Of a DNA stretch of 64,000 nt, positions 2,021 through 61,334 are shown piece by piece; position 1 is the first letter of the stretch; every line of letters starts with the position of its first letter. The stretch is taken from positions 62,001 to 126,000 of the IMG/VR virus record IMGVR_UViG_3300028045_000001. One strand, given 5' to 3'. The translations under genes and the position numbers were made by a program. The notes beneath the pieces are model-generated. The model was not told the origin of the DNA and made no database searches. It saw only the letters and a list, made by a program, of their open reading frames with translations.

Positions 2021-2133
2021 TTACATGAACCCAAAGGATAGAGGGTAGCACTCTTAATTTTTATGTAGTAATTACATTATATATGTATTGAGGTAATATT
2101 TAGTATTTTAAACGGCACGCATTGGAGAACAAA

Positions 2134-4563
2134 ATGGCAAATAATGAGATAGCAGATTACGGGATGGATGACATTGCGGACTACTCTGACAATAACTTAC
2201 TCGGGATAAGGGTATCGCCGACATCTGTTCTTGGAGAGCTTGGTCCAAAGGGACAGGTATTATGTGCCCGAGAAGTGATTGATAACAGTGTGGATGAGCA
2301 CGTGAAAGCAAAGGTCGCTGTCCCTATAAAAGTATGGATACACGAGTATCGTGGTGGGTATGAGATCAAAGTACTGGACTTTGGTAGGGGCATACCTCCT
2401 GAGGGACTTGAGATAGTAGCAACTAAATTATACACCTCTGCTAAGCAGGGTGGCACTGCTTACGGAGGTGCTACAGCCGGTACATTTGGTATAGGTCTTG
2501 TTGCATCGGCAGCCGCATCCAGATTGTTTTATTGTATTGCTATGAGAGAGGGGGAGTATGCCAAGATAGCGATTGAAGAAGGCAATACCAAAGAGTACAT
2601 CCATGATACGAAAATGGGATTTACACAAAGTGGCACTTACACCTTCATACAGTCGGATCCAAAAATATTTGAGGACTGTGATGAGTTTATTGGTGGTGAG
2701 GGCGAGAAAAGATTAATGGAGTTCTTACACTTCATTTCTGCAGTGTCTCCAAAACACCTACAAATAGAAGTTTATAAATCAAAAGGTAGGCGGACAACCA
2801 TAAAAGACTTACTTGCAGATACTTCAGATGTATTGCGCCAATTCGAAATACCTCCAAGAGCACAAATAATATTTAAAACCAACCCAGACGATACAATGAA
2901 GGAGTATGTCCAACAATATTATGGGATCAGGCCAGAGAATACACTTTTCGATATAACTGAATTGAAAAGGGAGCTTACAGATACTGGCGACATGGGATTC
3001 AATGTAAGTTTTGTAGTAGCCAATAATATGCGGGCCCCAGTACAAGTAATGTCGGCAGTCAACCGTGTATTCATGCGACTCCAAACCTCGGATCACATAA
3101 CTGTATTTTTAAGTACGATCAAAGAAATGGTACTACCCTATATAGACGATGAGGACATTGGAATATTCTTTAGGTCACAATATAGACTACCCATATACCC
3201 ATCAATACTTGTTAATTTAAGGGAGGTCAAATTTGTAGGAGCCTCAAAAGAAGGATTCAAAAGTAATAAATTTAGGGACCGTTACAGGAATGCATTGATA
3301 GAGTGTTTCAATACCCTTCCTGAAAAATGGGAAGAGCTGCATGAAGTATTAAAGGACGACATAGACACTAAGTATAAAGCATTCAGTAAAACAATAGTTC
3401 GCCACAAAGGTTTGAATAATGTATTTGAACATTTGAATAAGCCAAAGAACTATAAGGGTTGTCGAAGTAAAGACAGTCGAATTATAGAATTATTTCTTAC
3501 TGAAGGAAACTCTGCCGGTGATGCATTAAAGACATCACGGGATTCCACCACACAGGCACTGTATTATTTAATGGGGAAACCTGTAAATGCCCTGCAGAAA
3601 AGTAAATACGATGCCGATGAGATATATCAAGATCTTAAGCAGCTAATAGGTGTCGAATCGCATGACGCTACACTTGACAATATGTCGTTTAATAAGGTGC
3701 TCATACTGGCAGATGCCGATGCTGATGGACTGCACATCACAACGTTACTCATAAGTATTTTTTACAAGATCAATCCATTGATTATATCTGAGGGAAGGGT
3801 AGCTATCTGTAACCCGCCATTGTATTCGTTCTCGGTTGGCAACAAGACTTTATTTATGAGGGATGAAAACGCTAGACGCGACATGTTGATAAAGTTAGTG
3901 TATGCTCCGGCGCTGGATATTTTTATACAGACTGGGGATACGGTCATTAAGTTAGAAGGAGACAGCTACAGAGACCTATGCTACATGGTATTGAACGTCG
4001 GCACACGTATAGAGAATGCTGCTAAGATAGTGACTATGGACCCATCTTTGATGGAGCTATTCGCACCAGTAGTAGAGTTACTGAACCCAGATAAGATAGA
4101 CATAAAGGGACTCCAGGAGTATATTGAACTGCCTCTCAGTTATAACGAGATTGATAAAGCTATCATCATAGATATGCAGGATGGCTCCGAAAAAACAATA
4201 CCAATTAATAATTTATACGCTCAATTAAAGGAGGAAGTTTGTCCAGTATTGGATTCAATAAATGCAAAGTACTTTAATTTGTCTGTAACTACAAAGCAGA
4301 CCGATTACTACGAGGATCAACAGGTGACCTTTGTGTATCTACTCGGGCTATTTAAGTTGCTCGATAAGCAGGCAATTATATCTAGATTCAAAGGGATAGG
4401 GCAATTGAATCCCGATCAAATCGGACACACTTGTGTATCTCCAGCGACGCGATCCATAATAAATATATATGCTATAGGGGATGTGGAAAAGATAATGGCA
4501 TATCTTGGAGAAGACCCTTCTATTAGAAAATCAATAATAGAAAATGTTGATGCAATAATTTAG
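2134..4563 (+). CDS. gyrB: Type IIA topoisomerase subunit B (GyrB/ParE-like)
   Basis: GHKL motifs EVIDNSVDE, DFGRGIP, GTFGIG; TOPRIM EGNSAG, GKPVN, DADADG; C-terminal RFKGIG; ATG 2134 follows GGAGAA (ORF track starts at TTG 2122). Confidence 0.9.
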   Translation: MANNEIADYGMDDIADYSDNNLLGIRVSPTSVLGELGPKGQVLCAREVIDNSVDEHVKAKVAVPIKVWIHEYRGGYEIKVLDFGRGIPPEGLEIVATKLYTSAKQGGTAYGGATAGTFGIGLVASAAASRLFYCIAMREGEYAKIAIEEGNTKEYIHDTKMGFTQSGTYTFIQSDPKIFEDCDEFIGGEGEKRLMEFLHFISAVSPKHLQIEVYKSKGRRTTIKDLLADTSDVLRQFEIPPRAQIIFKTNPDDTMKEYVQQYYGIRPENTLFDITELKRELTDTGDMGFNVSFVVANNMRAPVQVMSAVNRVFMRLQTSDHITVFLSTIKEMVLPYIDDEDIGIFFRSQYRLPIYPSILVNLREVKFVGASKEGFKSNKFRDRYRNALIECFNTLPEKWEELHEVLKDDIDTKYKAFSKTIVRHKGLNNVFEHLNKPKNYKGCRSKDSRIIELFLTEGNSAGDALKTSRDSTTQALYYLMGKPVNALQKSKYDADEIYQDLKQLIGVESHDATLDNMSFNKVLILADADADGLHITTLLISIFYKINPLIISEGRVAICNPPLYSFSVGNKTLFMRDENARRDMLIKLVYAPALDIFIQTGDTVIKLEGDSYRDLCYMVLNVGTRIENAAKIVTMDPSLMELFAPVVELLNPDKIDIKGLQEYIELPLSYNEIDKAIIIDMQDGSEKTIPINNLYAQLKEEVCPVLDSINAKYFNLSVTTKQTDYYEDQQVTFVYLLGLFKLLDKQAIISRFKGIGQLNPDQIGHTCVSPATRSIINIYAIGDVEKIMAYLGEDPSIRKSIIENVDAII

Positions 4564-4602: not shown

Positions 4603-4613
4603 TTATATATTAC
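4603..4613 (+). promoter_or_regulatory. Putative early promoter TTATATATTAC
   Basis: Exact motif copy between gyrB stop and next ORF. Confidence 0.65.
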
Positions 4614-4662
4614 TATATAGATGTATCATGGCATACTTTTTAGAGAGAAAGGTGGTATAATT

Positions 4663-5052
4663 ATGGAACCAGAGTCGGCAGCGGAGTTAAGGAAGCGGGT
4701 CGCTATATTGGAGCGATCTACAGGACCTCAAATTATACAAAACATTGGACAGTGTCTCACCGGCAATACGTTGAAACAGTTGGCGGTATCTATTCTAGAA
4801 CGAAATAAAATAGGGGTGACTTACTTTAGATCAAAGTGCGATGAGTTATTTAGACAAGAAGGAATACGGAACAATAGAAGACGGAGTAGTCTAATATATA
4901 ACTATATAGATATGCTCAAAACTAAGCCAAACATCACTTGGCCAAAGTTCATACATTTGTTGATGTATTTGGATTTTAAATTACTGAAGGTTACAATCGA
5001 GATAGAAGTAGATGGAGAGGCGCAGACCCATGTAGTTGAGTCAGACGAATAG
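4663..5052 (+). CDS. Hypothetical basic protein between topoisomerase subunits
   Basis: ORF track 4621..5052; ATG 4663 preceded by AAAGGTGG; C-terminal ITWPKFIHLLMYL segment reminiscent of a phiKZ-like hypothetical family (recall only). Confidence 0.7.
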   Translation: MEPESAAELRKRVAILERSTGPQIIQNIGQCLTGNTLKQLAVSILERNKIGVTYFRSKCDELFRQEGIRNNRRRSSLIYNYIDMLKTKPNITWPKFIHLLMYLDFKLLKVTIEIEVDGEAQTHVVESDE

Positions 5053-5209: not shown

Positions 5210-7435
5210 ATGAAAAAAGAAGGACATGGATTTTTAGGACTAACTGACGATGCGACGTCATCTGACGTAATAGAACAATTCAGCATCGAGTATATGTTGT
5301 CCCTATTGCAACAGCGAGCCAGACATGGGATCGATGGCCTGTCAAAGGTTCTAAGAAGGATAATATATGTTGTTCACGCAGTCAATAAAAAGAAGAAAGT
5401 CTATAATCATACTGGCATGGTCATGGATTATCACCCATCAGGTGACAGTAGCATAAGTGACGCTATGACCAGCCTCATGCAGCCATGGGTAAATGCTATC
5501 CCATTGTTGGACAATCAAGGCGGTATAGGTAGCTACAGTGGAAGCAGGGCTGCTGCAAGTAGGTACCTAGAGGGCATGGTATCCCAATTCACAAGGGACG
5601 TATTCATAACCCCATCCTTTAATAAAACATTGACTATGATACCGGTATCTGGAGAAAAGCTATATGAACCAGAATACTTTATACCGAAAATTCCAACTGC
5701 ATTTATAATGGGGTCTAATGTAACTGCAAAAGGATTTCGAACTAAATCGCCTCAGTATAATTTTAACGACGTGTGCGAATTAGTTAAATATTTATCAGAG
5801 CATATATTGGAAAAACAGACCGATCTAACGGATGAGCATCTTGATGAGATGGCTAAGTACCTTATCCCAGACCCACCGTCGCACGCCCATCTAAGGAATA
5901 GGCGGCAATTATTGGCAGGTATAAAGGAGCGAAGGTTTGATATCCCATTGGCATTCGATGGGCATTTGGACATAAGTAGGTCCTCTGTGATCGTCAAGAG
6001 CATACCGCCTGGATACTCCTTCGTTAAAAATGTCGATGACAAACTCAAAGACCTTATCAGAGATAAGAAATCCTGGCTATGGCCGATACAAGAAAACTAC
6101 AATGATGAGACCGATCAGAGGTCCTCTGTTATGTGGGCAAAAGCCCGGATAGAATTAAAGAGATCGGCGGATGTGTTTGAGCATTTGCATTCATTCAAAT
6201 CAGCCGTAGGGTTCTCTCAAAATAATGTTTATAATTATAAATGGCTATATAGAGGACAACTTAGGGTTCTTAATCCAATAGAAATGCTAACGCTCTGGGC
6301 TAAAGAACGAATGAGCAACATTGGCTCGGAGTACACTCATTCAATAAAAACAAAGATTGAGGAGAACAGACGGTTAAAGGCACTGATAAAAATACAAGGC
6401 CACACCAAGGAAGTTATTAGAATCATTGAGGATAGCGAGGACACAGTTGACGCAAACAAAGCGCTAGCTAATAAATTCGAGATATCTGTGTATCAGGCGT
6501 CCGCTATAACTGCGATGCGAACTGGGCAACTAACCAAACGAAGTAAGGCAGTGCTCATGGAAGATGAGAAACAATCCGTGCGCTCTATAAAAGAACTAAA
6601 TAATGCATTCAAACAAATACCAGAACGGATGTTCCAGGAAGCGGACCAATTGCAAAATAAGTATAGTGGGAGAGCGGGCAGAAGGACCAGTTTTTCTAAT
6701 TTCAGTATGTATGTACAAATATTCAATAGAACGAGTACAGGATTCATCCAGTTGTACAGCATGGATGAATTAAAAAAGAAGTTTGTTGATTTCAAGGGAG
6801 TGCCTATGAATATAGGTAGTTTTTCAAAAGGTCGAGATTATAAGTACATTCTGGTAGACGGATCAGTTATAACTGAAGTTAAAAAAGACTTGCCGAAAGA
6901 ATCAACTGGCGTGCTGGTAACCAGTCCCAATAAACTTATGTATACGGTTAAGCTGAGTGATGGTACTATATGTTATTTAAATAAACTATATGCTATTGAA
7001 AATGGAACGTTGGTTTCTGACAAAGTATTATTGGTAACCAGAAAGGGAACCCTAACTGAGACAGCCACTACTTCGCTCCCTCTTAGGAAAAGTGCAAAAG
7101 CAGTCGGCAATATGACCGATGTCAAGCATGTTGCCAATGTCCCAGGAAAACAATATTATGTCGTTTATGTTGACCCAAAAGAAAAGAATGTAATACGGGC
7201 CACTATGGTGACGACACCACAGGGCAGTATAAAGCAAGTTTCAGTACGAACAAAAATACTGGCTGTGAATAAAATGACTCAACCATTGATGGTGACACTG
7301 CCATCAGACGTGATAAATAGACTCAGTACAAACCACATCTATATAAGTGACATGCGCCCAAGATTTGATAAGTCTGCCCACATCGTAATCGATGTTAAAA
7401 AATTAAAGAAGAAAAGATCACTATTGATTGGTTAG
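5210..7435 (+). CDS. gyrA: Type IIA topoisomerase subunit A (GyrA/ParC-like)
   Basis: DGLSKVLRRI (canonical DGLKPVxRR), YHPSGDSSI (YHPHGDxxI), catalytic AAASRYLE (AAAMRYTE), coiled-coil QAxAI..MR, ~240-aa beta-rich C-terminal region. Confidence 0.88.
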   Translation: MKKEGHGFLGLTDDATSSDVIEQFSIEYMLSLLQQRARHGIDGLSKVLRRIIYVVHAVNKKKKVYNHTGMVMDYHPSGDSSISDAMTSLMQPWVNAIPLLDNQGGIGSYSGSRAAASRYLEGMVSQFTRDVFITPSFNKTLTMIPVSGEKLYEPEYFIPKIPTAFIMGSNVTAKGFRTKSPQYNFNDVCELVKYLSEHILEKQTDLTDEHLDEMAKYLIPDPPSHAHLRNRRQLLAGIKERRFDIPLAFDGHLDISRSSVIVKSIPPGYSFVKNVDDKLKDLIRDKKSWLWPIQENYNDETDQRSSVMWAKARIELKRSADVFEHLHSFKSAVGFSQNNVYNYKWLYRGQLRVLNPIEMLTLWAKERMSNIGSEYTHSIKTKIEENRRLKALIKIQGHTKEVIRIIEDSEDTVDANKALANKFEISVYQASAITAMRTGQLTKRSKAVLMEDEKQSVRSIKELNNAFKQIPERMFQEADQLQNKYSGRAGRRTSFSNFSMYVQIFNRTSTGFIQLYSMDELKKKFVDFKGVPMNIGSFSKGRDYKYILVDGSVITEVKKDLPKESTGVLVTSPNKLMYTVKLSDGTICYLNKLYAIENGTLVSDKVLLVTRKGTLTETATTSLPLRKSAKAVGNMTDVKHVANVPGKQYYVVYVDPKEKNVIRATMVTTPQGSIKQVSVRTKILAVNKMTQPLMVTLPSDVINRLSTNHIYISDMRPRFDKSAHIVIDVKKLKKKRSLLIG

Positions 7436-9085: not shown

Positions 9086-9120
9086 ACCACTATCCCTCTC
9101 CAACGGAGAGGGATAGTGGT
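9086..9120. terminator. 16-bp stem hairpin
   Basis: ACCACTATCCCTCTCC-aac-GGAGAGGGATAGTGGT. Confidence 0.75.
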
Positions 9121-37244: not shown

Positions 37245-37288
37245 TATGTGACATACGAACGCCTTGCAAGGCGTTCGTATGTCACATA
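37245..37288. terminator. Perfect 44-bp loopless palindrome (centre TTGCAA) between convergent genes
   Basis: TATGTGACATACGAACGCCTTG|CAAGGCGTTCGTATGTCACATA. Confidence 0.88.
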
Positions 37289-40730: not shown

Positions 40731-40842
40731 AATTTGACCTCCTAAACTAGCCGTTAAAAGTGTACTGTAAGCAGTTATATAATAATCTAAAATTGATAAA
40801 TATTTTATACCCAATACAAGAATATTTATTAGGAGAACAGTT

Positions 40843-41076
40843 ATGGACAAAACAAAGCAGCCTCTTTCAAAGGTATTGTCAATGAAGCCAACAGAAGCTG
40901 ATCTTGGCTCCAGTGAGTTCAAAGAATTATGGAACTACATTAAGTCTTGGGAGATAAAAGTTCCCGGAGATACTGTCCACGATAGGGGGAGACCAGCAGG
41001 TCAGCATGTAATGGATATTCTGGTAGCAGTCGGCCTAAGGAACTCAGCCGATTATTTTAAATCAGATACAGAGTAA
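40843..41076 (+). CDS. Small hypothetical protein (77 aa)
   Basis: AGGAGA RBS; divergent from 40730. Confidence 0.65.
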   Translation: MDKTKQPLSKVLSMKPTEADLGSSEFKELWNYIKSWEIKVPGDTVHDRGRPAGQHVMDILVAVGLRNSADYFKSDTE

Positions 41077-41198
41077 TTCAGTCTAATATAAAAAAAGGGG
41101 GGGAGTCCCAATGTTTTATTTACTGACCGATCTTCAAAGTCTAAGAGTATAATAGACGTACTTTAAATGACTTTATTAAAATTATAAGATAGATAATC

Positions 41199-41232
41199 CA
41201 CAGGGCTGTGAGCATATGCTCACAGCCCTGTG
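41199..41232. terminator. Perfect 34-bp loopless palindrome (centre CATATG)
   Basis: CACAGGGCTGTGAGCAT|ATGCTCACAGCCCTGTG. Confidence 0.85.
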
Positions 41233-41263
41233 AGTAAATTGAATGTCTTTTAATTTTTTTCAT

Positions 41264-41274
41264 TTATATATTAC
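41264..41274 (+). promoter_or_regulatory. Putative early promoter TTATATATTAC with no downstream CDS
   Basis: Exact motif copy followed by ~600 nt without an ORF of 60 aa or more. Confidence 0.65.
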
Positions 41275-41900
41275 TATAATGAACATAGAAATTGTGACTT
41301 TACTTTTCCAAGTATAGTTATGGTTACTATGCTCTACTTTACTCCGATATCGGCATTCATATAAATGTGATTGAAACTTGTAGTTGGAAGGAGGTGAAGT
41401 CTAAAGTGGTAGATCTAGTGACACTAAATTAAAATAATTTGGAGTCCCTGATCGCCAGTGCTTATTGATTCATGTGTAGGAGAGTTCTCCTAACCTACGC
41501 AAATTGCATTAGAGTACTTGGAGAGGATGATCTTACGCATATGATGTGGGGATGCGGTCGTAACTAGTGTTATGGTTTAAGATTTTTAAAAATTAATAAT
41601 ACTATTCTTGGGACAATGACTAGAGTGGGGTAGCGTTGTTTTACATTTAATTGAAGTTTAATTTCAGGAAATGGAGATCAAAGATATGTGGGATAGATTT
41701 GATGTTTTAAGAATGTAACGATATAATTGAACGATAAGTTTTTTAAAATAATAAACTTTCGCTTTAGGTTAGTATGTGAACTGTATATACATTTCTCTTC
41801 ATAAGCATATTGACCTATGCCGACTATCGGTATATATGTATTGATGGCGTTCAAAAGGTTGATTTGATAATGGCGATGTTTTGACTATTATCAAATCAAC
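41275..41900 (+). ncRNA. Candidate early non-coding transcript (or decayed gene)
   Basis: Bracketed by promoter motif and hairpin 41858..41900; no ORF of 60 aa or more before 41881; no RNA family recognised. Confidence 0.25.
41858..41900. terminator. 14-bp stem hairpin downstream of sbcC stop
   Basis: GTTGATTTGATAAT...ATTATCAAATCAAC with 15-nt spacer. Confidence 0.55.
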
Positions 41901-41941
41901 TACCTTGATGATCTCAATTAGTTACCGTGTTTCTTTTTTAT

Positions 41942-44479
41942 TTAAAGTATACGTACGTGCTCATTGTAAATTTCCGGCAGGATCATACTCCCAGGGTCAG
42001 AGCTCAGGCAGATCACATCACTATTTGGCATGTTCATCAGCGATGCTTGATGATCGATTAAAAACATATGTGTTATTTTTTTATCCTTTAACAACGATAT
42101 TAGTAACTCCAATACTTTCTGTTGATGGACCTCTGTCATATTGGCAGATATCTCATCAAAGAAAATTGGGAACCTATTGTTCCAACCAGTCACTGTATAT
42201 ATTCCCAACTGAAATGCTAAGTTAATGGCATTCTTTTGTCCATCACTACACTCTTTTATTTCTGGGACAATGTGGTCTCCAACAGTGACTTTAAAATCAA
42301 ATGTTATCTCTGACCCTTTGTTGTATTTATGTATCTTTAACGGCTCAATCCACATGACCTTTAAGTATGAGTTGGCTTTGGCTATAACTCTGTTTGTAAA
42401 TGATCGTATATGTGTGTGAGGAATGGCATCGGGTGACAACTGCTCAGTTACCAATTCGTACTCATATATTTTTTCTTCGATCTCCTTTATATTTGGTAGA
42501 ATTTCTCCTTCTAGTCTAGTAATATAACTATCTTGTTCTTTAAGTATGGATGAGACCTGGATCAATCTATCAGTAGCCGATGCTTTAGCGGCATTGAGCT
42601 CTATTAAGTTTTCCCTGTAGAAGGTAATGGCTCCATTGGAAATAATCCACTCTATCACGTTATTAAAGGCTTCTTTGATGTCGGCTACCACGTCCAATTT
42701 TTTTTTATATTCTGTCGCCGATTTGAGGTCCGTGGTATGTATGTTCAGTGAACGTTTTATGGATGCTATTTCGAGGTTTAATTTCGATAGCTCGACTTCT
42801 TTGCTTATAATTGTCTTAGTTGTAAATTGGATAGTTTTATCCTTTGATTCCTGCAAGGTCTTTAACTTAAAACGATGCGTTGATAGCACTATGGATAATG
42901 CATCACGTTGTGCTCGCTTAGTTGAATTGGATACAAGTTTTCGAATGCGATTTAGTATGATGGATGGGTTGCTCGACAACACCTCATTGAGCGAGGACCC
43001 ATCCAATATATATTCGTTCATTTGCAACGAATCTAAAAATGATCTTAACTCAGTCAACGCCGACCTAATGCTATTTGTAAAGGGCTCTATTTTTGACATA
43101 GTTTCGTGCAATGAACTAACCGCACTTTGAATCTTCGCGTCTTGTACTTCAACAAGTCGTTCTAACTCTGTCACCTTGGCGGATAGTTTCTTTTCTTTAC
43201 CAACCATATCAGTTCGCAATGAACATTCGGTAGTACAGTCCATAGGGTATACAACTAATCTATGCTCATCGAGGTACTTGTGGGCCTGGTCTAAGTTATC
43301 AGTTACCATGGACAAGGTGCTTTGATATTCTGAGATTTTAGACCTAAGTATTTGGCAGGTATGTTCCATACTCTCTATCTCAGGCATTGGTAGTATCTTA
43401 GTACCACAGTCCCGTATAGTGTTTAGCAATGAATCAAGTTTATCAGTATTGTTTGATATATGTTCCATCTTTTCTCTATCAATAATTGGCAGAGAGTCGT
43501 CGAGTGTCAGCTTAGATAGCATATCTTCGTGTCCAGCTATTTTTGTTTCGTATCCACGCATAGTTTCATTTATGTCTATGTATCTAAGCTTACTATGCAT
43601 GTCCAATTCTTCTTTGATAGTTATCGCTTGATCAACTTGGCGTTCTTTCATGAAATTTAATTTATCAAGAACATTAGTTATAATTTGTATTGTATTAGCC
43701 ACCTCATATATTGGAGTAGTCATCGCTATGTCGGACAGTAACTCCTTGGCATTACGCACCATCTGCATGGACGACTCACTTGGTTTCTCCGGCATTCGAT
43801 TGCTGATGTCAGTTACTTTCTGTTCGAACACAACTATCAATTTATCCATAATATTAATCTGGGAGGTTAAGATGTCTGATTCTTTCCGGACATCCTTTAG
43901 GTTACTCTCTGGCAGGATTTGATCAAGTAGTGATAATTTTCGTGTAGTAAGTAGCTTTAGTTGACTCTTAGCTGCCCTCAATTCTCGGTGTATTTTTTTG
44001 TAGTGTTCTAACACAAACCCTATATCAACTGGGTTTGCTTTTATAAATAATTCCCGCCTTTCTATTTTGCTCATTTCACATAGTTTATATTCTCCGTGCA
44101 CTAGTTTGTTCACGACTGGCGTCCAATTTAGATATTCGATCATTAATTCTTGTTGGACGGTAGCCGTCCCAGACACATTCAAATCATCTGTATCATTTTT
44201 TATGAAGCTATGATTCTTACCCCCCTTAGAAAAGTCGCTAGTTATTTCATATACGTCTCCTGTGATAGTATCTTCTAAAATAAGTTTACACGACCCCTTC
44301 TTAAATTCAGGCTTGGTCTTTGGGGCAGGGGACATTAATTTGAACAAGCTACTTTTACCAACCCCGTTGGCCCCGGTAACTATATTACAGTTGTTGTATA
44401 CCTGGATGCTTAATTGCATTATGCCTCCAGTGATAAAAGGTATATGCCCAACTACATCTATACTCTTGATATTTAACAT
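41942..44479 (-). CDS. sbcC: SbcC/Rad50-like SMC ATPase
   Basis: Walker A GANGVGKS, long coiled coil, signature CSDGQ, Walker B FFDE, H-loop IDHQ. Confidence 0.9.
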   Translation of the reverse strand: MLNIKSIDVVGHIPFITGGIMQLSIQVYNNCNIVTGANGVGKSSLFKLMSPAPKTKPEFKKGSCKLILEDTITGDVYEITSDFSKGGKNHSFIKNDTDDLNVSGTATVQQELMIEYLNWTPVVNKLVHGEYKLCEMSKIERRELFIKANPVDIGFVLEHYKKIHRELRAAKSQLKLLTTRKLSLLDQILPESNLKDVRKESDILTSQINIMDKLIVVFEQKVTDISNRMPEKPSESSMQMVRNAKELLSDIAMTTPIYEVANTIQIITNVLDKLNFMKERQVDQAITIKEELDMHSKLRYIDINETMRGYETKIAGHEDMLSKLTLDDSLPIIDREKMEHISNNTDKLDSLLNTIRDCGTKILPMPEIESMEHTCQILRSKISEYQSTLSMVTDNLDQAHKYLDEHRLVVYPMDCTTECSLRTDMVGKEKKLSAKVTELERLVEVQDAKIQSAVSSLHETMSKIEPFTNSIRSALTELRSFLDSLQMNEYILDGSSLNEVLSSNPSIILNRIRKLVSNSTKRAQRDALSIVLSTHRFKLKTLQESKDKTIQFTTKTIISKEVELSKLNLEIASIKRSLNIHTTDLKSATEYKKKLDVVADIKEAFNNVIEWIISNGAITFYRENLIELNAAKASATDRLIQVSSILKEQDSYITRLEGEILPNIKEIEEKIYEYELVTEQLSPDAIPHTHIRSFTNRVIAKANSYLKVMWIEPLKIHKYNKGSEITFDFKVTVGDHIVPEIKECSDGQKNAINLAFQLGIYTVTGWNNRFPIFFDEISANMTEVHQQKVLELLISLLKDKKITHMFLIDHQASLMNMPNSDVICLSSDPGSMILPEIYNEHVRIL

Positions 44480-44794: not shown

Positions 44795-45241
44795 ATGAAA
44801 ATGGATCTTTTTACAAAACTTGATTACTCTTTTGGTGCAAGCGAAAAACATGGGACACCTGCACACAGAGCCAAGCCAGACAAAGCTAAACTCAGTAAAT
44901 TTTATACTGATGAGGGCATTACAGACGAAGAGTACAAGAAGTTTTCTGTAGCCACCGAAAAGATGATCGAGGGGGCTATGGTGCAGGTTGCTAAAGATGG
45001 GATCGCAGCAGGCGAAGCACGAGTTATCTCAGTACCAATGGGCGTAGGGGATACGTTTGAAGTCTCGTACCACCCAGAAAAACTCCAGCCAAATCCTCAG
45101 ACAGGCATTCCAACTCTTAAGAAGCACGCCGTCGGGGCTAAGCGAAAATACAGTATGACAACAAAGCAGAGAAGCTTGGCAGTTTCAATTTCAGAGAGTG
45201 CCATAGCTGCAGAGGGCTCTTCTAAGAAGAAGGCAGCGTAA
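44795..45241 (+). CDS. HU/IHF-like DNA-bending protein (divergent)
   Basis: TFEVSYHPEKLQPNPQTG aligns gap-free with HU TFKVNHRAERTGRNPQTG; AAGGAG RBS; Lys-rich C-tail. Confidence 0.68.
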   Translation: MKMDLFTKLDYSFGASEKHGTPAHRAKPDKAKLSKFYTDEGITDEEYKKFSVATEKMIEGAMVQVAKDGIAAGEARVISVPMGVGDTFEVSYHPEKLQPNPQTGIPTLKKHAVGAKRKYSMTTKQRSLAVSISESAIAAEGSSKKKAA

Positions 45242-45249
45242 AGCATGCG

Positions 45250-45285
45250 CTCATATACACTTACCGAATGGTAAGTGTATATGAG
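45250..45285. terminator. 16-bp stem hairpin between convergent HU-like and ruvC genes
   Basis: CTCATATACACTTACC-gaat-GGTAAGTGTATATGAG. Confidence 0.8.
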
Positions 45286-46542: not shown

Positions 46543-46580
46543 CACCCATGCTCCCTCTGTGCACAGAGGGAGCATGGGTG
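46543..46580. terminator. Perfect 38-bp loopless palindrome (centre GTGCAC) between convergent genes
   Basis: CACCCATGCTCCCTCTGTG|CACAGAGGGAGCATGGGTG. Confidence 0.88.
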
Positions 46581-56044: not shown

Positions 56045-57550
56045 TTAAAACAAATCAGTTGTTGTCGAGTTATCTTTTTCGTCGTCCGCATACTCTGCGT
56101 ATATATCTTTTACTGCCTTAGACTCCGAAGCATAATCATCCATTATGCCGTTACTGTTAAATTTATATGCAAAAGATTTATCTTTAGCTGGTGTGTTATC
56201 TACGTATCTATGCTTACCTCTTAGGGCCGTAAGATATGGGTTGCCTAAATGATTTTCTTCTATGTGTGTGTACATTGTCAGGTCAAACTCATGTTCGAGT
56301 CCTTTACATACGGCTATACAACTAGGACTAAAGCGTTTAACAATATTGGCGGAGTCCGATGATATTGTTAGGGCTGTATGGTTTAGTTGGTTGGCTGTGA
56401 TATAGGCATAGCCGTGGTATCGTGCATGGTTGACAACATCCGTGGCCAACTTACTTAGTCCTCTTTCTGAATTTTCATTATTAAGTTGCATCTTTGCAAG
56501 GTAATCTTTTATGACAGCAAAGATCTCGTACCCTTCTTGTTTATATTGTTCAAATAAATCTAGATATGATTGGTAATCGAATGTGTCTCCAAGTCTTCTT
56601 ACAATTTTAAAATGCCATCCGTTCTTAGCGAACTCTTTATGTACAAAAGCCACTATATCCCTATCTGTGAAATCTTCTGGTGGGGCAGTATTGAATAGAT
56701 TGAGGTACAACTCTATAAACCATTTCCTGGTATTTTTCATTGCCTCGTTTTCAAGTGATATGAATAGGGCCAATGGCTTTAAATCAGTTTTAGGTGGCTT
56801 ATTTAGTGTCGTTATCCACCTTCCGATTTTTAGTAACCACCCAGACTTAAAGTGATGGGATAGTCCATATATCATCATGGTTTCGCCATAGCAAATACCT
56901 GCGTTTTCCCCCATCATTGCGTTCAGTCCCTGAAGGCCCATCTTGAGGACATTGGTCGATGCGGTTCTTTTTGAATCAGCAGCGAATGCACGCTCCATAG
57001 AATCAGTATCATTGAAATCTATCTCATCTACCCTATCAGTTGTTTGGATGGCCAACTTAGGTGGACTAAATGATCGGGCTGTCTGCAGTACACTATCCAG
57101 TAGTTCATCTTGTTTTGCTGGATTGGACGTGTACTTACATTTCCTTACCCTACTTATCATGGCACATACATGAGCATCGTACGAGTACCAAGTTATGCTC
57201 TTGTATAATTTAGATCGTATGCGCCTACACTTTTCAGGATTGATTGTATTGTCGATTATACACTTTATTGACTCTAATATTTCTGGATCGCCATCTATCT
57301 GCTTAGAATGCTGTAACTTGAGCAGTACATCATGAGCCCTCCCATCAGTTATATTCCCTGACTCATGCAGCATGGAATTTATTATTCCAACCAACAATAC
57401 GTTTATGTCAGAGTTTAGTTCATCGTCACGGTCAACCTCTTTTTCGAATACCTCCAGCACAGATCTAACTAATTCTTTGTCATCCGCCTCATCGCTATGG
57501 GTAATTAAGTAAACAATATCAATTAATAATTCATGATCGATGGTAATCAT
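56045..57550 (-). CDS. dnaB: DnaB-like replicative helicase (phiKZ gp118-like)
   Basis: GLQGLNAMMG..GICYGE, degenerate Walker A GLSHHFKSG, FISLENE, DYL, TANQL, RGKHR. Confidence 0.8.
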   Translation of the reverse strand: MITIDHELLIDIVYLITHSDEADDKELVRSVLEVFEKEVDRDDELNSDINVLLVGIINSMLHESGNITDGRAHDVLLKLQHSKQIDGDPEILESIKCIIDNTINPEKCRRIRSKLYKSITWYSYDAHVCAMISRVRKCKYTSNPAKQDELLDSVLQTARSFSPPKLAIQTTDRVDEIDFNDTDSMERAFAADSKRTASTNVLKMGLQGLNAMMGENAGICYGETMMIYGLSHHFKSGWLLKIGRWITTLNKPPKTDLKPLALFISLENEAMKNTRKWFIELYLNLFNTAPPEDFTDRDIVAFVHKEFAKNGWHFKIVRRLGDTFDYQSYLDLFEQYKQEGYEIFAVIKDYLAKMQLNNENSERGLSKLATDVVNHARYHGYAYITANQLNHTALTISSDSANIVKRFSPSCIAVCKGLEHEFDLTMYTHIEENHLGNPYLTALRGKHRYVDNTPAKDKSFAYKFNSNGIMDDYASESKAVKDIYAEYADDEKDNSTTTDLF

Positions 57551-57610
57551 TATTTATATTCCTAATTATTTTATATAAGTATGGAAATTCTCATAGGAGG
57601 TCTTTAAAAC

Positions 57611-59161
57611 ATGTCACATCTCTTTCACACATACATGGCACGTAGAACTAAAACTGAGTCTACGAAAGATATGCCATTTAGTGAACAAGTCTGGATAAAC
57701 AATGCAACCTCAGCTTACGATGCCTTATCATTGCGACACAAAATTATACATTGTGTCAGGCAACGTTTTATACATTCATATTTTAAGCATGTTTGTGATA
57801 TATATCATGTCGATGGCCCATCTATTTTTACGGACATGGAAGCCGAATTTAATCGAAGGGAGAAGCGGATTGATGACGAGATCAATTATGCTAACGTAGG
57901 AGACTATGACGATGCTTGGTCCATAGCTAAGTCATTCATCACCCGTTGCAGATACATTAAGGGATACATGCCACCGAACGAAGCTCGTGAATTGGTCAGG
58001 CCAGATATTAATGATATCATGGGATTTTTTATAGATCAGAATACAGAAGAAAATTTTGTACCGAGTGTAGGTGGGCTTGATGCAATTAAAGGGATAGTTG
58101 CCTTCATTTTATATGCGGTAAAGCAACATGTTCCGATAACTGAAATGGATACCTTTATTCCGGATCCTTGTGTCCTATATCCAATGTATTCTGGGAATGG
58201 AGTTGTCTGGGTGAATAAAGTCCAAGTAGCCGAGCCGGGCTACTTACCCGAACGCAAGCTTCGGGAAGACTATAAATTTCATGATCATATATTAAGCTAT
58301 TTGAACATGCTGAACTTATCCGGCCAAGATTTTAACGCCATCATGCTATCCCTTTCATGCTTAGCGGTTGTAAATGACTCCCGCTCTGCGACAGGCTTTC
58401 AAAGATTATGTAATGTTGTAAACAATTATTATCTTAGCGGACAAAGACTCTCCAATAAATGGGAGGCTAAACTACCAGCACCTATATTCTTAGCAACAAT
58501 GAGATTTATGAGTGCACTGGTGACCGAGAATAATGTAAAAGTAGACAATCTTCACCTGTTGCATTTCATCTATGATCATGCACCTCCAATATATGCAAAT
58601 CTTGGCGATGTTGTCAAAAAGGCAATTGGAGGCCGGTATGTAAACCAGCATGAGGTGGCTATGCTAAAGAAATATGGCATTTCTAAAATAGTGCCAATGA
58701 AACGTAGCTATGATCTTTATAATCATATAAGGATGAATGCGGCTGACGATGATTTAGGTGAAGATGAATCAGTTACTGAAAATGATACAGGTGAGGGCGA
58801 CGGAGAAGAGGTTACTGGCGATAAGAACGTTGATGCCGGTGACGCGGATTCTGATACTAACATTTCAGATCCAGATGCAGACGGATCTGCCGAAGGGGAG
58901 GAGGAACCTGAAGAAACCCATATCGTAAAGATTGATGACGCTGGTATAGAATTTGAATTAAGTAGCGGTAATCTCTCATTTGCTGAATATATTTTGAGAG
59001 AAAGAATTATAAAACGATTGAATACAATATTGGCCAACCCAGGTAATCTTTCGGCAGAGAAAGTTGAATACTTAAAGTATTTCAGAAATCACTGGATTTA
59101 CTTGGTCAGTATAAACACTCTGTTGGCAATAACAAAAAATCTCAATATTGAAGGAGTTTGA
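57611..59161 (+). CDS. Conserved protein between helicase and capsid gene (phiKZ gp119 position), acidic C-terminal linker
   Basis: AGGAGG RBS; D/E-rich low-complexity stretch then YILRERI...LKYFRNHWIYLVS; ATGA-type overlap with capsid gene. Confidence 0.65.
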   Translation: MSHLFHTYMARRTKTESTKDMPFSEQVWINNATSAYDALSLRHKIIHCVRQRFIHSYFKHVCDIYHVDGPSIFTDMEAEFNRREKRIDDEINYANVGDYDDAWSIAKSFITRCRYIKGYMPPNEARELVRPDINDIMGFFIDQNTEENFVPSVGGLDAIKGIVAFILYAVKQHVPITEMDTFIPDPCVLYPMYSGNGVVWVNKVQVAEPGYLPERKLREDYKFHDHILSYLNMLNLSGQDFNAIMLSLSCLAVVNDSRSATGFQRLCNVVNNYYLSGQRLSNKWEAKLPAPIFLATMRFMSALVTENNVKVDNLHLLHFIYDHAPPIYANLGDVVKKAIGGRYVNQHEVAMLKKYGISKIVPMKRSYDLYNHIRMNAADDDLGEDESVTENDTGEGDGEEVTGDKNVDAGDADSDTNISDPDADGSAEGEEEPEETHIVKIDDAGIEFELSSGNLSFAEYILRERIIKRLNTILANPGNLSAEKVEYLKYFRNHWIYLVSINTLLAITKNLNIEGV

Positions 59162-61296: not shown

Positions 61297-61334
61297 GAGA
61301 CAACCAGCTTCCCATATGGGAAGCTGGTTGTCTC
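61297..61334 (+). terminator. Perfect 38-bp loopless palindrome (centre CATATG) after capsid gene, followed by T-tract
   Basis: GAGACAACCAGCTTCCCAT|ATGGGAAGCTGGTTGTCTC then CCTTTTTT. Confidence 0.88.

What the first reader, a model, noticed from the sequence alone, without database searches (positions are those of the whole stretch)
41264..41900. ~600-nt ORF-less unit bracketed by an early promoter motif and a hairpin: candidate phage ncRNA or origin
Seen: the largest non-coding gap in an otherwise dense window. It has a perfect early motif at its 5' end and a 14-bp stem at 41858-41900. Inside are a strong Shine-Dalgarno (AAGGAGGTGA, 41388-41397) followed only by an 8-codon GTG ORF, small stems (AGGAGA-gt-TCTCCT ~41478-41491; CCGATATCGG ~41344-41353) and AT-rich tracts. 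Inference: an abundant early regulatory RNA (decoy, sponge or antisense to the convergent sbcC 3' end), a micropeptide locus, or a transcription-activated replication origin next to a cruciform.
Basis: partly seen in the sequence, partly recalled or inferred. Interest (0 to 1): 0.6.

Follow-up and report, generated by a model that had tools for sequence, protein, structure and literature searches.

The report
ORF-less early transcription unit in jumbo phage
In an uncultured marine phiKZ-like jumbo phage, one of the strongest early promoters drives about 600 bases that encode no protein and end at a hairpin. This is most likely a structured non-coding early RNA, but there are no expression data and no relatives to test that.

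Summary

**Setting.** The window is part of a 239,960-bp jumbo phage assembled from seawater metagenomes. The phage carries a phiKZ-type early promoter (T-run, TATATTAC, then ATG) at 46 sites, all on the + strand.

**What is unusual.**
- 45 of the 46 sites are followed by an ORF of at least 60 aa.
- Only the site at 41267 is not, and it ranks third of the 32 strict-motif sites in motif score.
- The stretch 41077-41941 is the longest non-coding gap in the whole genome.
- Dicodon coding scores there are non-coding in all six frames (best frame 3.7 or below, against 9-24 in the flanking genes), and the three + frames hold 58 stops.
- The + strand RNA folds better than shuffled versions (z -3.9 for the body, -5.7 to -6.6 with the 3' hairpin). 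The - strand and ten other early mRNAs do not reach this.

**What is ordinary.** The upstream "cruciform" is the phage's usual terminator hairpin; there are about 85 like it genome-wide.

**What is missing.** There is no Rfam match, no homologue anywhere, no RNA-seq and no population variation.

**Verdict.** This is a stand-alone early non-coding RNA candidate whose function is unresolved. Rivals are a decayed gene cassette, micropeptides, a transcript-primed replication origin, and antisense control of sbcC. Interest is modest.

The parts
40843..41076 (+). 77-aa ORF, the upstream neighbour and a separate unit that ends at the 41199-41232 hairpin
   Evidence: Positive dicodon coding score on the + strand across 40790-41060. 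No Pfam or PHROG match.
41199..41232 (.). Perfect 17+17 palindrome; the phage's standard terminator hairpin, closing the upstream unit
   Evidence: About 85 such hairpins occur genome-wide, and many lie about 35 nt upstream of an early promoter. Here there are 34 nt between the hairpin and TATATTAC.
41239..41286 (+). phiKZ-type early (virion RNAP) promoter: T-run, TATATTAC at 41267-41274, conserved ATG at 41279-41281. The transcription start is inferred at about 41279, give or take 3.
   Evidence: rank 3 of 32, 41.8 bits; 46 sites on +, none on -. The motif equals the published phiKZ and 201phi2-1 early motif (PMC7058600; PMC11512511). The start position is inferred by analogy.
41279..41857 (+). 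ORF-less body of the predicted early RNA, folding into about 9 predicted stem-loop domains
   Evidence: No stop-free run longer than 44 codons. 21, 16 and 21 stops in the three + frames. No coding signal in any of the six frames. + strand MFE -149.6 with z -3.92 (0 of 100 shuffles as good), against - strand -96.5 with z -2.25.
41281..41334 (+). Predicted 5'-terminal long hairpin
   Evidence: -16.6 kcal/mol, mean pair probability 0.73.
41388..41432 (+). Perfect 10-nt Shine-Dalgarno (41388-41397) and an 8-codon GTG ORF (41406-41432)
   Evidence: the 10-mer is unique in the genome. The SD is predicted to be paired within the 41335-41396 domain.
41472..41540 (+). Best strand-specific local structure in the body
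   Evidence: -23.8 kcal/mol, pair probability 0.87; window 41400-41549 has z -4.1 on + and -0.2 on -.
41671..41718 (+). Mini-ORF of 10 codons (ATG 41686) or 15 codons (ATG 41671), with GGAG at 41673-41676
   Evidence: Read. Coding score is negative.
41727..41854 (+). Predicted 3' multi-hairpin domain
   Evidence: -34.4 kcal/mol, pair probability 0.85. It includes the hairpin at 41816-41834 flagged.
41858..41900 (.). 14-bp perfect stem with a 15-nt loop; a probable bidirectional terminator shared with the convergent sbcC-like gene
   Evidence: (-22 kcal/mol, pair probability 0.98). On the - strand it is followed by CUUUUG. One contig of run X5 shows A>G at 41908.
41942..44479 (-). Convergent SbcC/Rad50-like ATPase gene (context)
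   Evidence: Weak Pfam SMC_N and AAA_23 matches. tblastn matches SbcC-like genes of phiKZ-like phages at 20-25% identity.

Best explanation
This is a stand-alone early transcription unit that makes a structured non-coding RNA of about 600-620 nt.

Proposed sequence of events:
1. On injection, the phage's virion RNA polymerase starts at the consensus early promoter (TATATTAC at 41267, start near 41279).
2. It transcribes the ORF-less body.
3. It stops at, or the RNA is trimmed back to, the 41858-41900 hairpin.
4. The product begins with a long 5' hairpin and folds into a chain of stem-loops. It acts as RNA during the first minutes of infection, in regulation or host take-over, rather than as a message.

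Shown here: the promoter class and its strength, the unit boundaries, the absence of coding capacity, and excess structure on the + strand.

Inferred: that it is transcribed, where its ends lie, and that the RNA itself is the functional product. Its target is unknown.
For: - Promoter: the same extended motif occurs at 46 sites, all on the + strand. 45 of them have an ORF of at least 60 aa downstream, and this one does not. It is the 3rd strongest of the 32 strict-motif sites.
- Motif identity: it equals the published phiKZ and 201phi2-1 early promoter.
- RNA polymerase: the genome encodes multisubunit RNAP beta-like and beta'-like genes. The beta-like ORF (about 705 aa) sits directly behind an early promoter, as in phiKZ.
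- Format: the unit has the usual layout, with a terminator hairpin 34 nt upstream and another hairpin at its end.
- Non-coding: it is the longest gap in a genome that is about 92% coding. The dicodon score shows no coding signal in any of the six frames, while the flanking genes score clearly positive. There are 58 stops in the three + frames. There is no paralogue remnant in the genome and no similarity to the 276-aa gene that fills this slot in the nearest relative.
- Structure: the body has z -3.92 on + and -2.25 on -. The full length has z -5.7 to -6.6. Over the first 400 nt, z is -2.3 with the lowest MFE, against z of -0.9 to +1.2 for ten other early transcripts.
- Precedent: the jumbo phage PA5oct has transcribed ORF-less regions of 236-619 nt (PMC7318152).
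Against: - No RNA data: all five holder runs are DNA metagenomes.
- No homologue, so no covariation test. The phages collection, IMG/VR and JGI metagenomes gave nothing apart from the source contig itself.
- No Rfam family matches, even at E of 10 or less.
- The excess structure is moderate once the terminal hairpin is removed.
- Base composition resembles that of other early 5' UTRs, so composition by itself does not indicate a function.
- The closest, still distant, relative has a protein gene in this slot, which fits gene decay.
- SD-like sites with mini-ORFs are present.
Confidence: 0.45

Rival explanations
1. Empty cassette. An early gene was lost or decayed, leaving its promoter and terminators around inert spacer DNA. 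Any RNA made has no function.
For: In the nearest syntenic relative (L009/L010) the slot between sbcC and the DUF7484 gene holds a 276-aa ORF in the same orientation. The slot is variable in other phiKZ-like phages. The composition matches ordinary early untranslated sequence.
Against: No residual coding signal in any frame. No similarity to the 276-aa protein or to any gene of the genome. The promoter is a near-perfect consensus, ranked 3 of 32. The + strand folds better than shuffled versions. A genome that is about 92% coding rarely keeps 600 nt of junk.
Confidence: 0.2
2. Micropeptide locus. The RNA is a message for one or more tiny peptides: 8 codons behind the perfect SD, or 10-15 codons behind GGAG.
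For: AAGGAGGTGA is unique in the genome and lies 8 nt before a GTG. GGAG at 41673-41676 lies 9 nt before ATG 41686. GGAG occurs 5 times against 1.8 expected.
Against: The ORFs are 8-15 codons long and have negative coding scores. The strong SD is predicted to be sequestered in a helix. About 90% of the RNA would be untranslated.
Confidence: 0.12
3. Transcript-primed replication origin. The early transcript forms a persistent RNA:DNA hybrid that primes DNA synthesis, in the way of ColE1 RNA II or the T4 and T7 promoter-dependent origins.
For: The unit is a strong promoter followed by an ORF-less transcribed stretch. Window 41501-41750 has the highest GC skew (+0.53) and the lowest C content (7.2%) of the genome. 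AT-rich tracts are present. No DnaG-type primase motif was found, and an RNase H gene is present. A recent preprint suggests that RNA:DNA hybrids may initiate replication in primase-less chimalliviruses (PMC13648698).
Against: G content is only 21-24%. The composition of the whole body is like that of other early 5' UTRs. There are no iterons. Cumulative GC skew is monotonic, with no turn at this locus. According to the review, the virion RNAP is excluded from the replication compartment in phiKZ. Chimallin was not detected in this genome, so nucleus-forming status is unproven.
Confidence: 0.08
4. Cis control of the convergent sbcC-like gene, by read-through antisense RNA or by polymerase collision early in infection.
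For: The arrangement is convergent, with only 42 nt between the hairpin and the sbcC stop codon. On the + strand the hairpin has no U-tract.
Against: U-less perfect hairpins are the general terminator type in this genome. The hairpin lies outside the sbcC ORF. A 580-nt structured body is not needed for interference.
Confidence: 0.08

Closest known systems
phiKZ / 201phi2-1 early (virion RNAP) promoters and their transcription units
   Same: The core motif TATATTAC with a T-rich upstream element and a conserved purine-TG a few bases downstream. There are dozens of copies, and they sit in front of early genes, including an RNAP subunit gene.
   Different: In 201phi2-1 all early promoters are reported upstream of protein genes. 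This unit has none.
ncRNA candidates of phiKZ and 201phi2-1 found by ONT-cappable-seq and Grad-seq
   Same: Phage-encoded, structured RNAs delimited by a promoter and a terminator.
   Different: Those RNAs are 71-250 nt and mostly come from 5' UTRs by premature termination. The early-phase dRNA-seq study confirmed no phiKZ sRNA and suggested any would be expressed later. This one would be about 600 nt, stand-alone and early.
PA5oct ncRNA001-004 (jumbo phage, uses the host RNAP)
   Same: Transcribed ORF-less regions of 236-619 nt with no database similarity. Two of them are abundant from early infection.
   Different: They come from an unrelated phage, have no defined phage promoter, and are expression-proven. 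Here the promoter is defined but expression is unproven.
ColE1 RNA II and the T4 oriF/oriG and T7 primary origins (named from my own knowledge)
   Same: A promoter followed by an ORF-less, structured or AT-rich transcribed stretch.
   Different: No evidence here for a persistent hybrid, an RNase H processing site or a replication start.
phi29 pRNA (named from my own knowledge)
   Same: An ORF-less RNA transcribed from an early promoter of a lytic phage.
   Different: pRNA is 174 nt, sits at a genome end and belongs to an Rfam family. There is no Rfam match here.

Membership tests
phiKZ-type early transcription unit | Consensus TATATTAC with a T-rich upstream element | tested here: met
   against the published motifs.
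phiKZ-type early transcription unit | Many copies in front of genes, and a phage that encodes multisubunit RNAPs | tested here: met
   46 sites, all on the + strand, 45 of them with ORFs. RNAP beta-like and beta'-like ORFs are present.
phiKZ-type early transcription unit | Transcribed by the virion RNAP within minutes of infection | not testable with these tools
   No RNA run holds the phage.
phiKZ-type early transcription unit | Encodes an early protein | tested here: not met
Phage-encoded ncRNA | A discrete transcript is detected | not testable with these tools
   Only DNA metagenome contigs are available.
Phage-encoded ncRNA | No plausible ORF | tested here: met
   Only mini-ORFs of 8-15 codons lie behind SD-like sites; a 31-codon ATG ORF (41472-41567) has no SD and a negative coding score.
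Phage-encoded ncRNA | Structure beyond composition, specific to one strand | tested here: met
   z -3.92 on + against -2.25 on -.
Phage-encoded ncRNA | Conservation or covariation in relatives | tested here: inconclusive
   No relative holds the sequence. Population contigs are identical.
Any Rfam 15 family | Covariance-model match | tested here: not met
   No match at gathering score in the window. Only chance-level hairpin hits at E of 10 or less.
Transcript-primed origin (ColE1 / T4 / T7 type) | A promoter with an ORF-less transcribed region | tested here: met
Transcript-primed origin (ColE1 / T4 / T7 type) | A G-rich RNA segment able to form a persistent hybrid | tested here: inconclusive
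   GC skew peaks here, but G is only 21-24% and the composition is like other early UTRs.
Transcript-primed origin (ColE1 / T4 / T7 type) | A replication start or skew switch at the locus | tested here: not met
   Cumulative skew is monotonic. No iterons.
Decayed protein gene (pseudogene) | Residual similarity or coding signal | tested here: not met
   A wider translated search could not be run, because the tool refuses frames that contain stops.

The most novel reading that the evidence does not exclude
The unit is the transcript-primed replication origin of a primase-less phiKZ-like jumbo phage. The injected virion RNAP would lay down an R-loop on the most G-over-C-skewed stretch of the genome, and the phage's RNase H and DNA polymerase would convert it into the first primer.
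Probability: 0.07. Interest if true: 0.8.

Novelty: new member of a known kind. Interest (0 to 1): 0.38.

Why it matters
phiKZ-like jumbo phages run their first minutes of infection entirely on an injected RNA polymerase. Every early promoter described so far sits in front of a protein gene, and the known non-coding RNAs of these phages are short and mostly derived from 5' UTRs.

A top-ranked early promoter devoted to a 600-nt untranslated RNA would mean that an RNA, not a protein, is among the first products made. Such an RNA could take part in host take-over, counter-defence or, less probably, priming of replication, for which these phages have no known primase or origin.

The practical value is limited for now. 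The phage is uncultured, has no known host and has no close relatives.

Tried and rejected
- Rfam at gathering score and at E of 10 or less: nothing apart from chance hairpin hits.
- tRNA/tmRNA scan: none.
- blastn against 50,697 phage records: no match.
- Relatives through the sbcC-like neighbour: none in IMG/VR. The best of 5.8 billion proteins has 26% identity. Its contigs are syntenic but carry an unrelated 276-aa gene in this slot.
- Exact-word scans of IMG/VR and JGI metagenomes with two segments of the body: only the source contig was found.
- Sequencing runs: five seawater DNA runs hold the same phage and none is RNA. Laying the contigs showed identity apart from one SNP at 41908, so no variation analysis was possible.
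I did not work around this. Within-genome tblastn with X at the stops found only the promoter motif.
- Antisense targets: no complementarity of 14 nt or more to the rest of the genome beyond the hairpin's own arms.
- GGAGTCCC shared with the upstream spacer: not a recurring motif.
- CsrA-type sponge idea: GGA occurs 11 times against 8.3 expected, which is not enriched, and the sites are mostly paired.
- Origin signals: no iterons and no skew turn.
- 'Cruciform' as something special: rejected, since it is one of about 85 terminator-type hairpins.
- Chimallin: the 589-aa early ORF I tested has no Pfam or phage match, so nucleus formation is not shown.

Full report
**Context.** The window is bases 62001-126000 of a 239,960-bp virus record with direct terminal repeats. 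The record was assembled from a seawater metagenome. GC content is 39%.

The phage has phiKZ-like features. Its SbcC-like and DUF7484 proteins find their homologues mainly in phiKZ-related jumbo phages of Pseudomonas, Erwinia, Vibrio and others, at 20-28% identity. It also encodes multisubunit RNA polymerase beta-like and beta'-like ORFs.

It is an orphan. The best relative of the 845-aa SbcC-like protein among 5.8 billion proteins has 26% identity.

**Check of the observation.**
- TATATTAC at 41267-41274.
- AAGGAGGTGA at 41388-41397, followed by an 8-codon GTG ORF at 41406-41432.
- The two small stems.
- A perfect 14-bp inverted repeat at 41858-41871 / 41887-41900.

The promoter motif is real and highly non-random:
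- The extended pattern (TCA, about 8 nt, T-run, ATTTA, TATATTAC, tat-ATG-aa) occurs 32 times in strict form and 46 times at 18 bits or more.
- All copies are on the + strand and none is on the - strand.
- Its core is the published early-promoter motif of phiKZ and 201phi2-1 (PMC7058600; PMC11512511; PMC8244752).
- The site at 41267 scores 41.8 bits, third of the 32 strict-motif sites.

**What makes the locus unusual.** Of the 46 sites, 45 are followed by an ORF of at least 60 aa. Most of these start within 140 nt and all within 370 nt. The site at 41267 is the only exception.

With a crude ORF call, the gap around it is the longest in the whole genome, which is about 92% coding.

The stretch is truly non-coding:
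- The longest stop-free run on the + strand is 44 codons.
- The three + frames carry 21, 16 and 21 stops.
- A dicodon score trained on this genome's long ORFs shows no coding signal in any of the six frames from about 41000 to 41930 (best frame 3.7 or lower).
- The same score is clearly positive (9-24) in the DUF7484 gene, the 77-aa ORF at 40843-41076 and the sbcC-like gene.

It is not an assembly artefact. Independent contigs from other seawater runs cover it with no differences.

**Anatomy.** The genome contains about 85 long perfect hairpins (stems of 11-22 bp, loops mostly 0-6 nt) at intergenic sites. Many lie about 35 nt upstream of an early promoter. It lies 34 nt before TATATTAC and most simply terminates the upstream 77-aa unit.

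The unit therefore reads:
1. Terminator hairpin.
2. Early promoter.
3. A body of about 580 nt.
4. The 41858-41900 hairpin.
5. 42 nt further on, the stop codon of the convergent sbcC-like gene.

The second hairpin has a U-run only on the - strand side. U-less hairpins are the rule in this genome, however, so I read it as a bidirectional terminator (inference).

**RNA structure.**

| Sequence folded | Strand | MFE (kcal/mol) | z-score |
|---|---|---|---|
| 41278-41941, full length | + | -182.7 | -5.7 to -6.6 |
| 41278-41941, full length | - | -117 | -3.2 |
| 41279-41856, without terminal hairpin | + | -149.6 | -3.92 (0 of 100 shuffles as good) |
| 41279-41856, without terminal hairpin | - | -96.5 | -2.25 |
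| First 400 nt of this unit | + | -105.1 | -2.3 |
| First 400 nt of ten other early transcripts | + | -75.8 to -100.0 | -0.9 to +1.2 |

- Over the first 400 nt, this unit has the lowest free energy and the lowest z-score of the eleven early transcripts tested.
- The model has a 5'-terminal 54-nt hairpin and well-defined domains at 41397-41463, 41472-41540, 41609-41673 and 41727-41854.
- 45 of its 244 pairs are G-U, which explains the strand asymmetry.
- Local z-scores single out 41400-41549, at -4.1 on + and -0.2 on -.

This is moderate, not decisive, evidence for a structured RNA.

**Composition.** The 250-nt window 41501-41750 has the highest GC skew (+0.53) and the lowest C content (7.2%) in the genome. 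Over the whole body, however, C is 12.1% and skew is 0.28. That is close to the pooled 5' UTRs of the other early units (12.3% and 0.19). The composition therefore marks untranslated early-transcribed sequence rather than a special function.

**Comparative evidence.** There is none.
- Nothing in Rfam.
- No match in the phage collection, IMG/VR or JGI metagenomes apart from the source contig itself.
- No usable variation in the population contigs.

The nearest syntenic contigs (L009 and L010) have a 276-aa ORFan between sbcC and the DUF7484 gene, convergent with sbcC. It shows no similarity to this stretch. In Vibrio phage pTD1 and Pseudomonas phage PS119XW, the region after sbcC is filled with small co-directional genes. 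The slot is therefore variable, and the ORF-less unit is specific to this lineage.

**Interpretation.** The best-supported reading is a stand-alone early non-coding RNA of about 600-620 nt, with confidence 0.45. The unit structure and the lack of coding capacity are shown. Transcription, the RNA's ends and its function are inferred.

Rival readings:

| Rival | Confidence | Main points |
|---|---|---|
| Decayed gene cassette | 0.2 | Fits the variable slot. Argued against by the near-consensus promoter, the lack of any coding remnant and the excess structure. |
| Micropeptides | 0.12 | The genome's only perfect 10-nt SD precedes an 8-codon ORF, and GGAG precedes a 10-15-codon ORF. Coding scores are negative and the SD is predicted to be paired. 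|
| Transcript-primed origin | 0.08 | Attractive because chimalliviruses lack a primase, and RNA:DNA hybrids have been proposed as initiation sites (PMC13648698). This genome has an RNase H and no DnaG-type motif. Without positive support here. |
| Antisense control of sbcC | 0.08 | The hairpin lies outside the sbcC ORF. |

**Known parallels.**
- ORF-less transcribed regions of 236-619 nt are documented in jumbo phage PA5oct.
- Short ncRNAs, mostly derived from 5' UTRs, are documented in phiKZ and 201phi2-1.
- In 201phi2-1 all early promoters precede protein genes. The early-phase dRNA-seq study of phiKZ confirmed no phage sRNA and suggested any would be expressed later.

I therefore file this as a new member of the known kind 'phage-encoded ncRNA candidate', with an unusual size and an unusual early, stand-alone setting.

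**Limits.**
- Chimallin was not detected, so I do not claim that the phage forms a nucleus.

Noticed in passing
G000 57496-57780 (about 4.5 kb left of the window; L004 1514-1797): A second early promoter is followed by a leader of about 250 nt that is clearly GC-richer than the genome average of 39%. It starts with a hairpin plus U7 directly after the predicted start site, and has a second G5...U10 element before the SD and ATG. Fold z is -2.45 and there is no Rfam hit. It may be an attenuator or a 5'-UTR-derived ncRNA.
   Followed up: partly
Whole genome; in the window for example at 81-114, 1958-1991, 9086-9120, 37245-37288, 45250-45285, 46543-46580, 61297-61334: About 85 long perfect hairpins or palindromes (stems of 11-22 bp, loops mostly 0-6 nt, usually no U-tract) sit at intergenic sites, often about 35 nt upstream of early promoters. 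They appear to be this phage's terminator type. Several are preceded on the + strand by ATGTAATA.
   Followed up: partly
Whole genome, + strand only: All 46 early-promoter-like sites lie on the + strand, so all - strand genes must be middle or late. The purine-TG 4 nt after TATATTAC is conserved, as in 201phi2-1.
   Followed up: yes
window 4606-5052; also G000 10447, 14842 and 177716: Some early promoters have their ORF start at, or within 3 nt of, the conserved ATG of the motif (ORFs begin 8-15 nt after TATATTAC). This would give leaderless early mRNAs.
   Followed up: no
G000 144602, 170974, 171618 (window 82602, 108974, 109618; outside the window): Three early units share an identical start of the 5' UTR and encode ORFs of 124-136 aa. 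This looks like a paralogous early gene family.
   Followed up: no
window 44567 and 44638: Two tandem early promoters 71 nt apart lie in front of the same 148-aa ORF (44795-45241), in the 315-nt divergent region shared with the sbcC-like gene.
   Followed up: no
window 40760-40922: The TTG-extended DUF7484 ORF (- strand, to 40922) overlaps the 77-aa + ORF (from 40843). Coding scores suggest that the - gene starts near 40800-40850, which leaves a very short divergent promoter region.
   Followed up: partly
window 2122-4563 and 5210-7435: Type II DNA topoisomerase is encoded as two separate large ORFs, with a 143-aa early ORF between them.
   Followed up: no
G000 56064-56088 and 56144-56557 (left of the window): A (TA)12 microsatellite lies next to a stand-alone 154-aa RNase H gene on the - strand. 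No DnaG-type zinc-ribbon primase motif was found in the genome.
   Followed up: partly
window 41908: The only difference seen across four seawater runs is A>G in one low-depth contig of run X5, just downstream of the 3' hairpin. The phage is otherwise identical in samples from five studies dated 2018-2019.
   Followed up: yes
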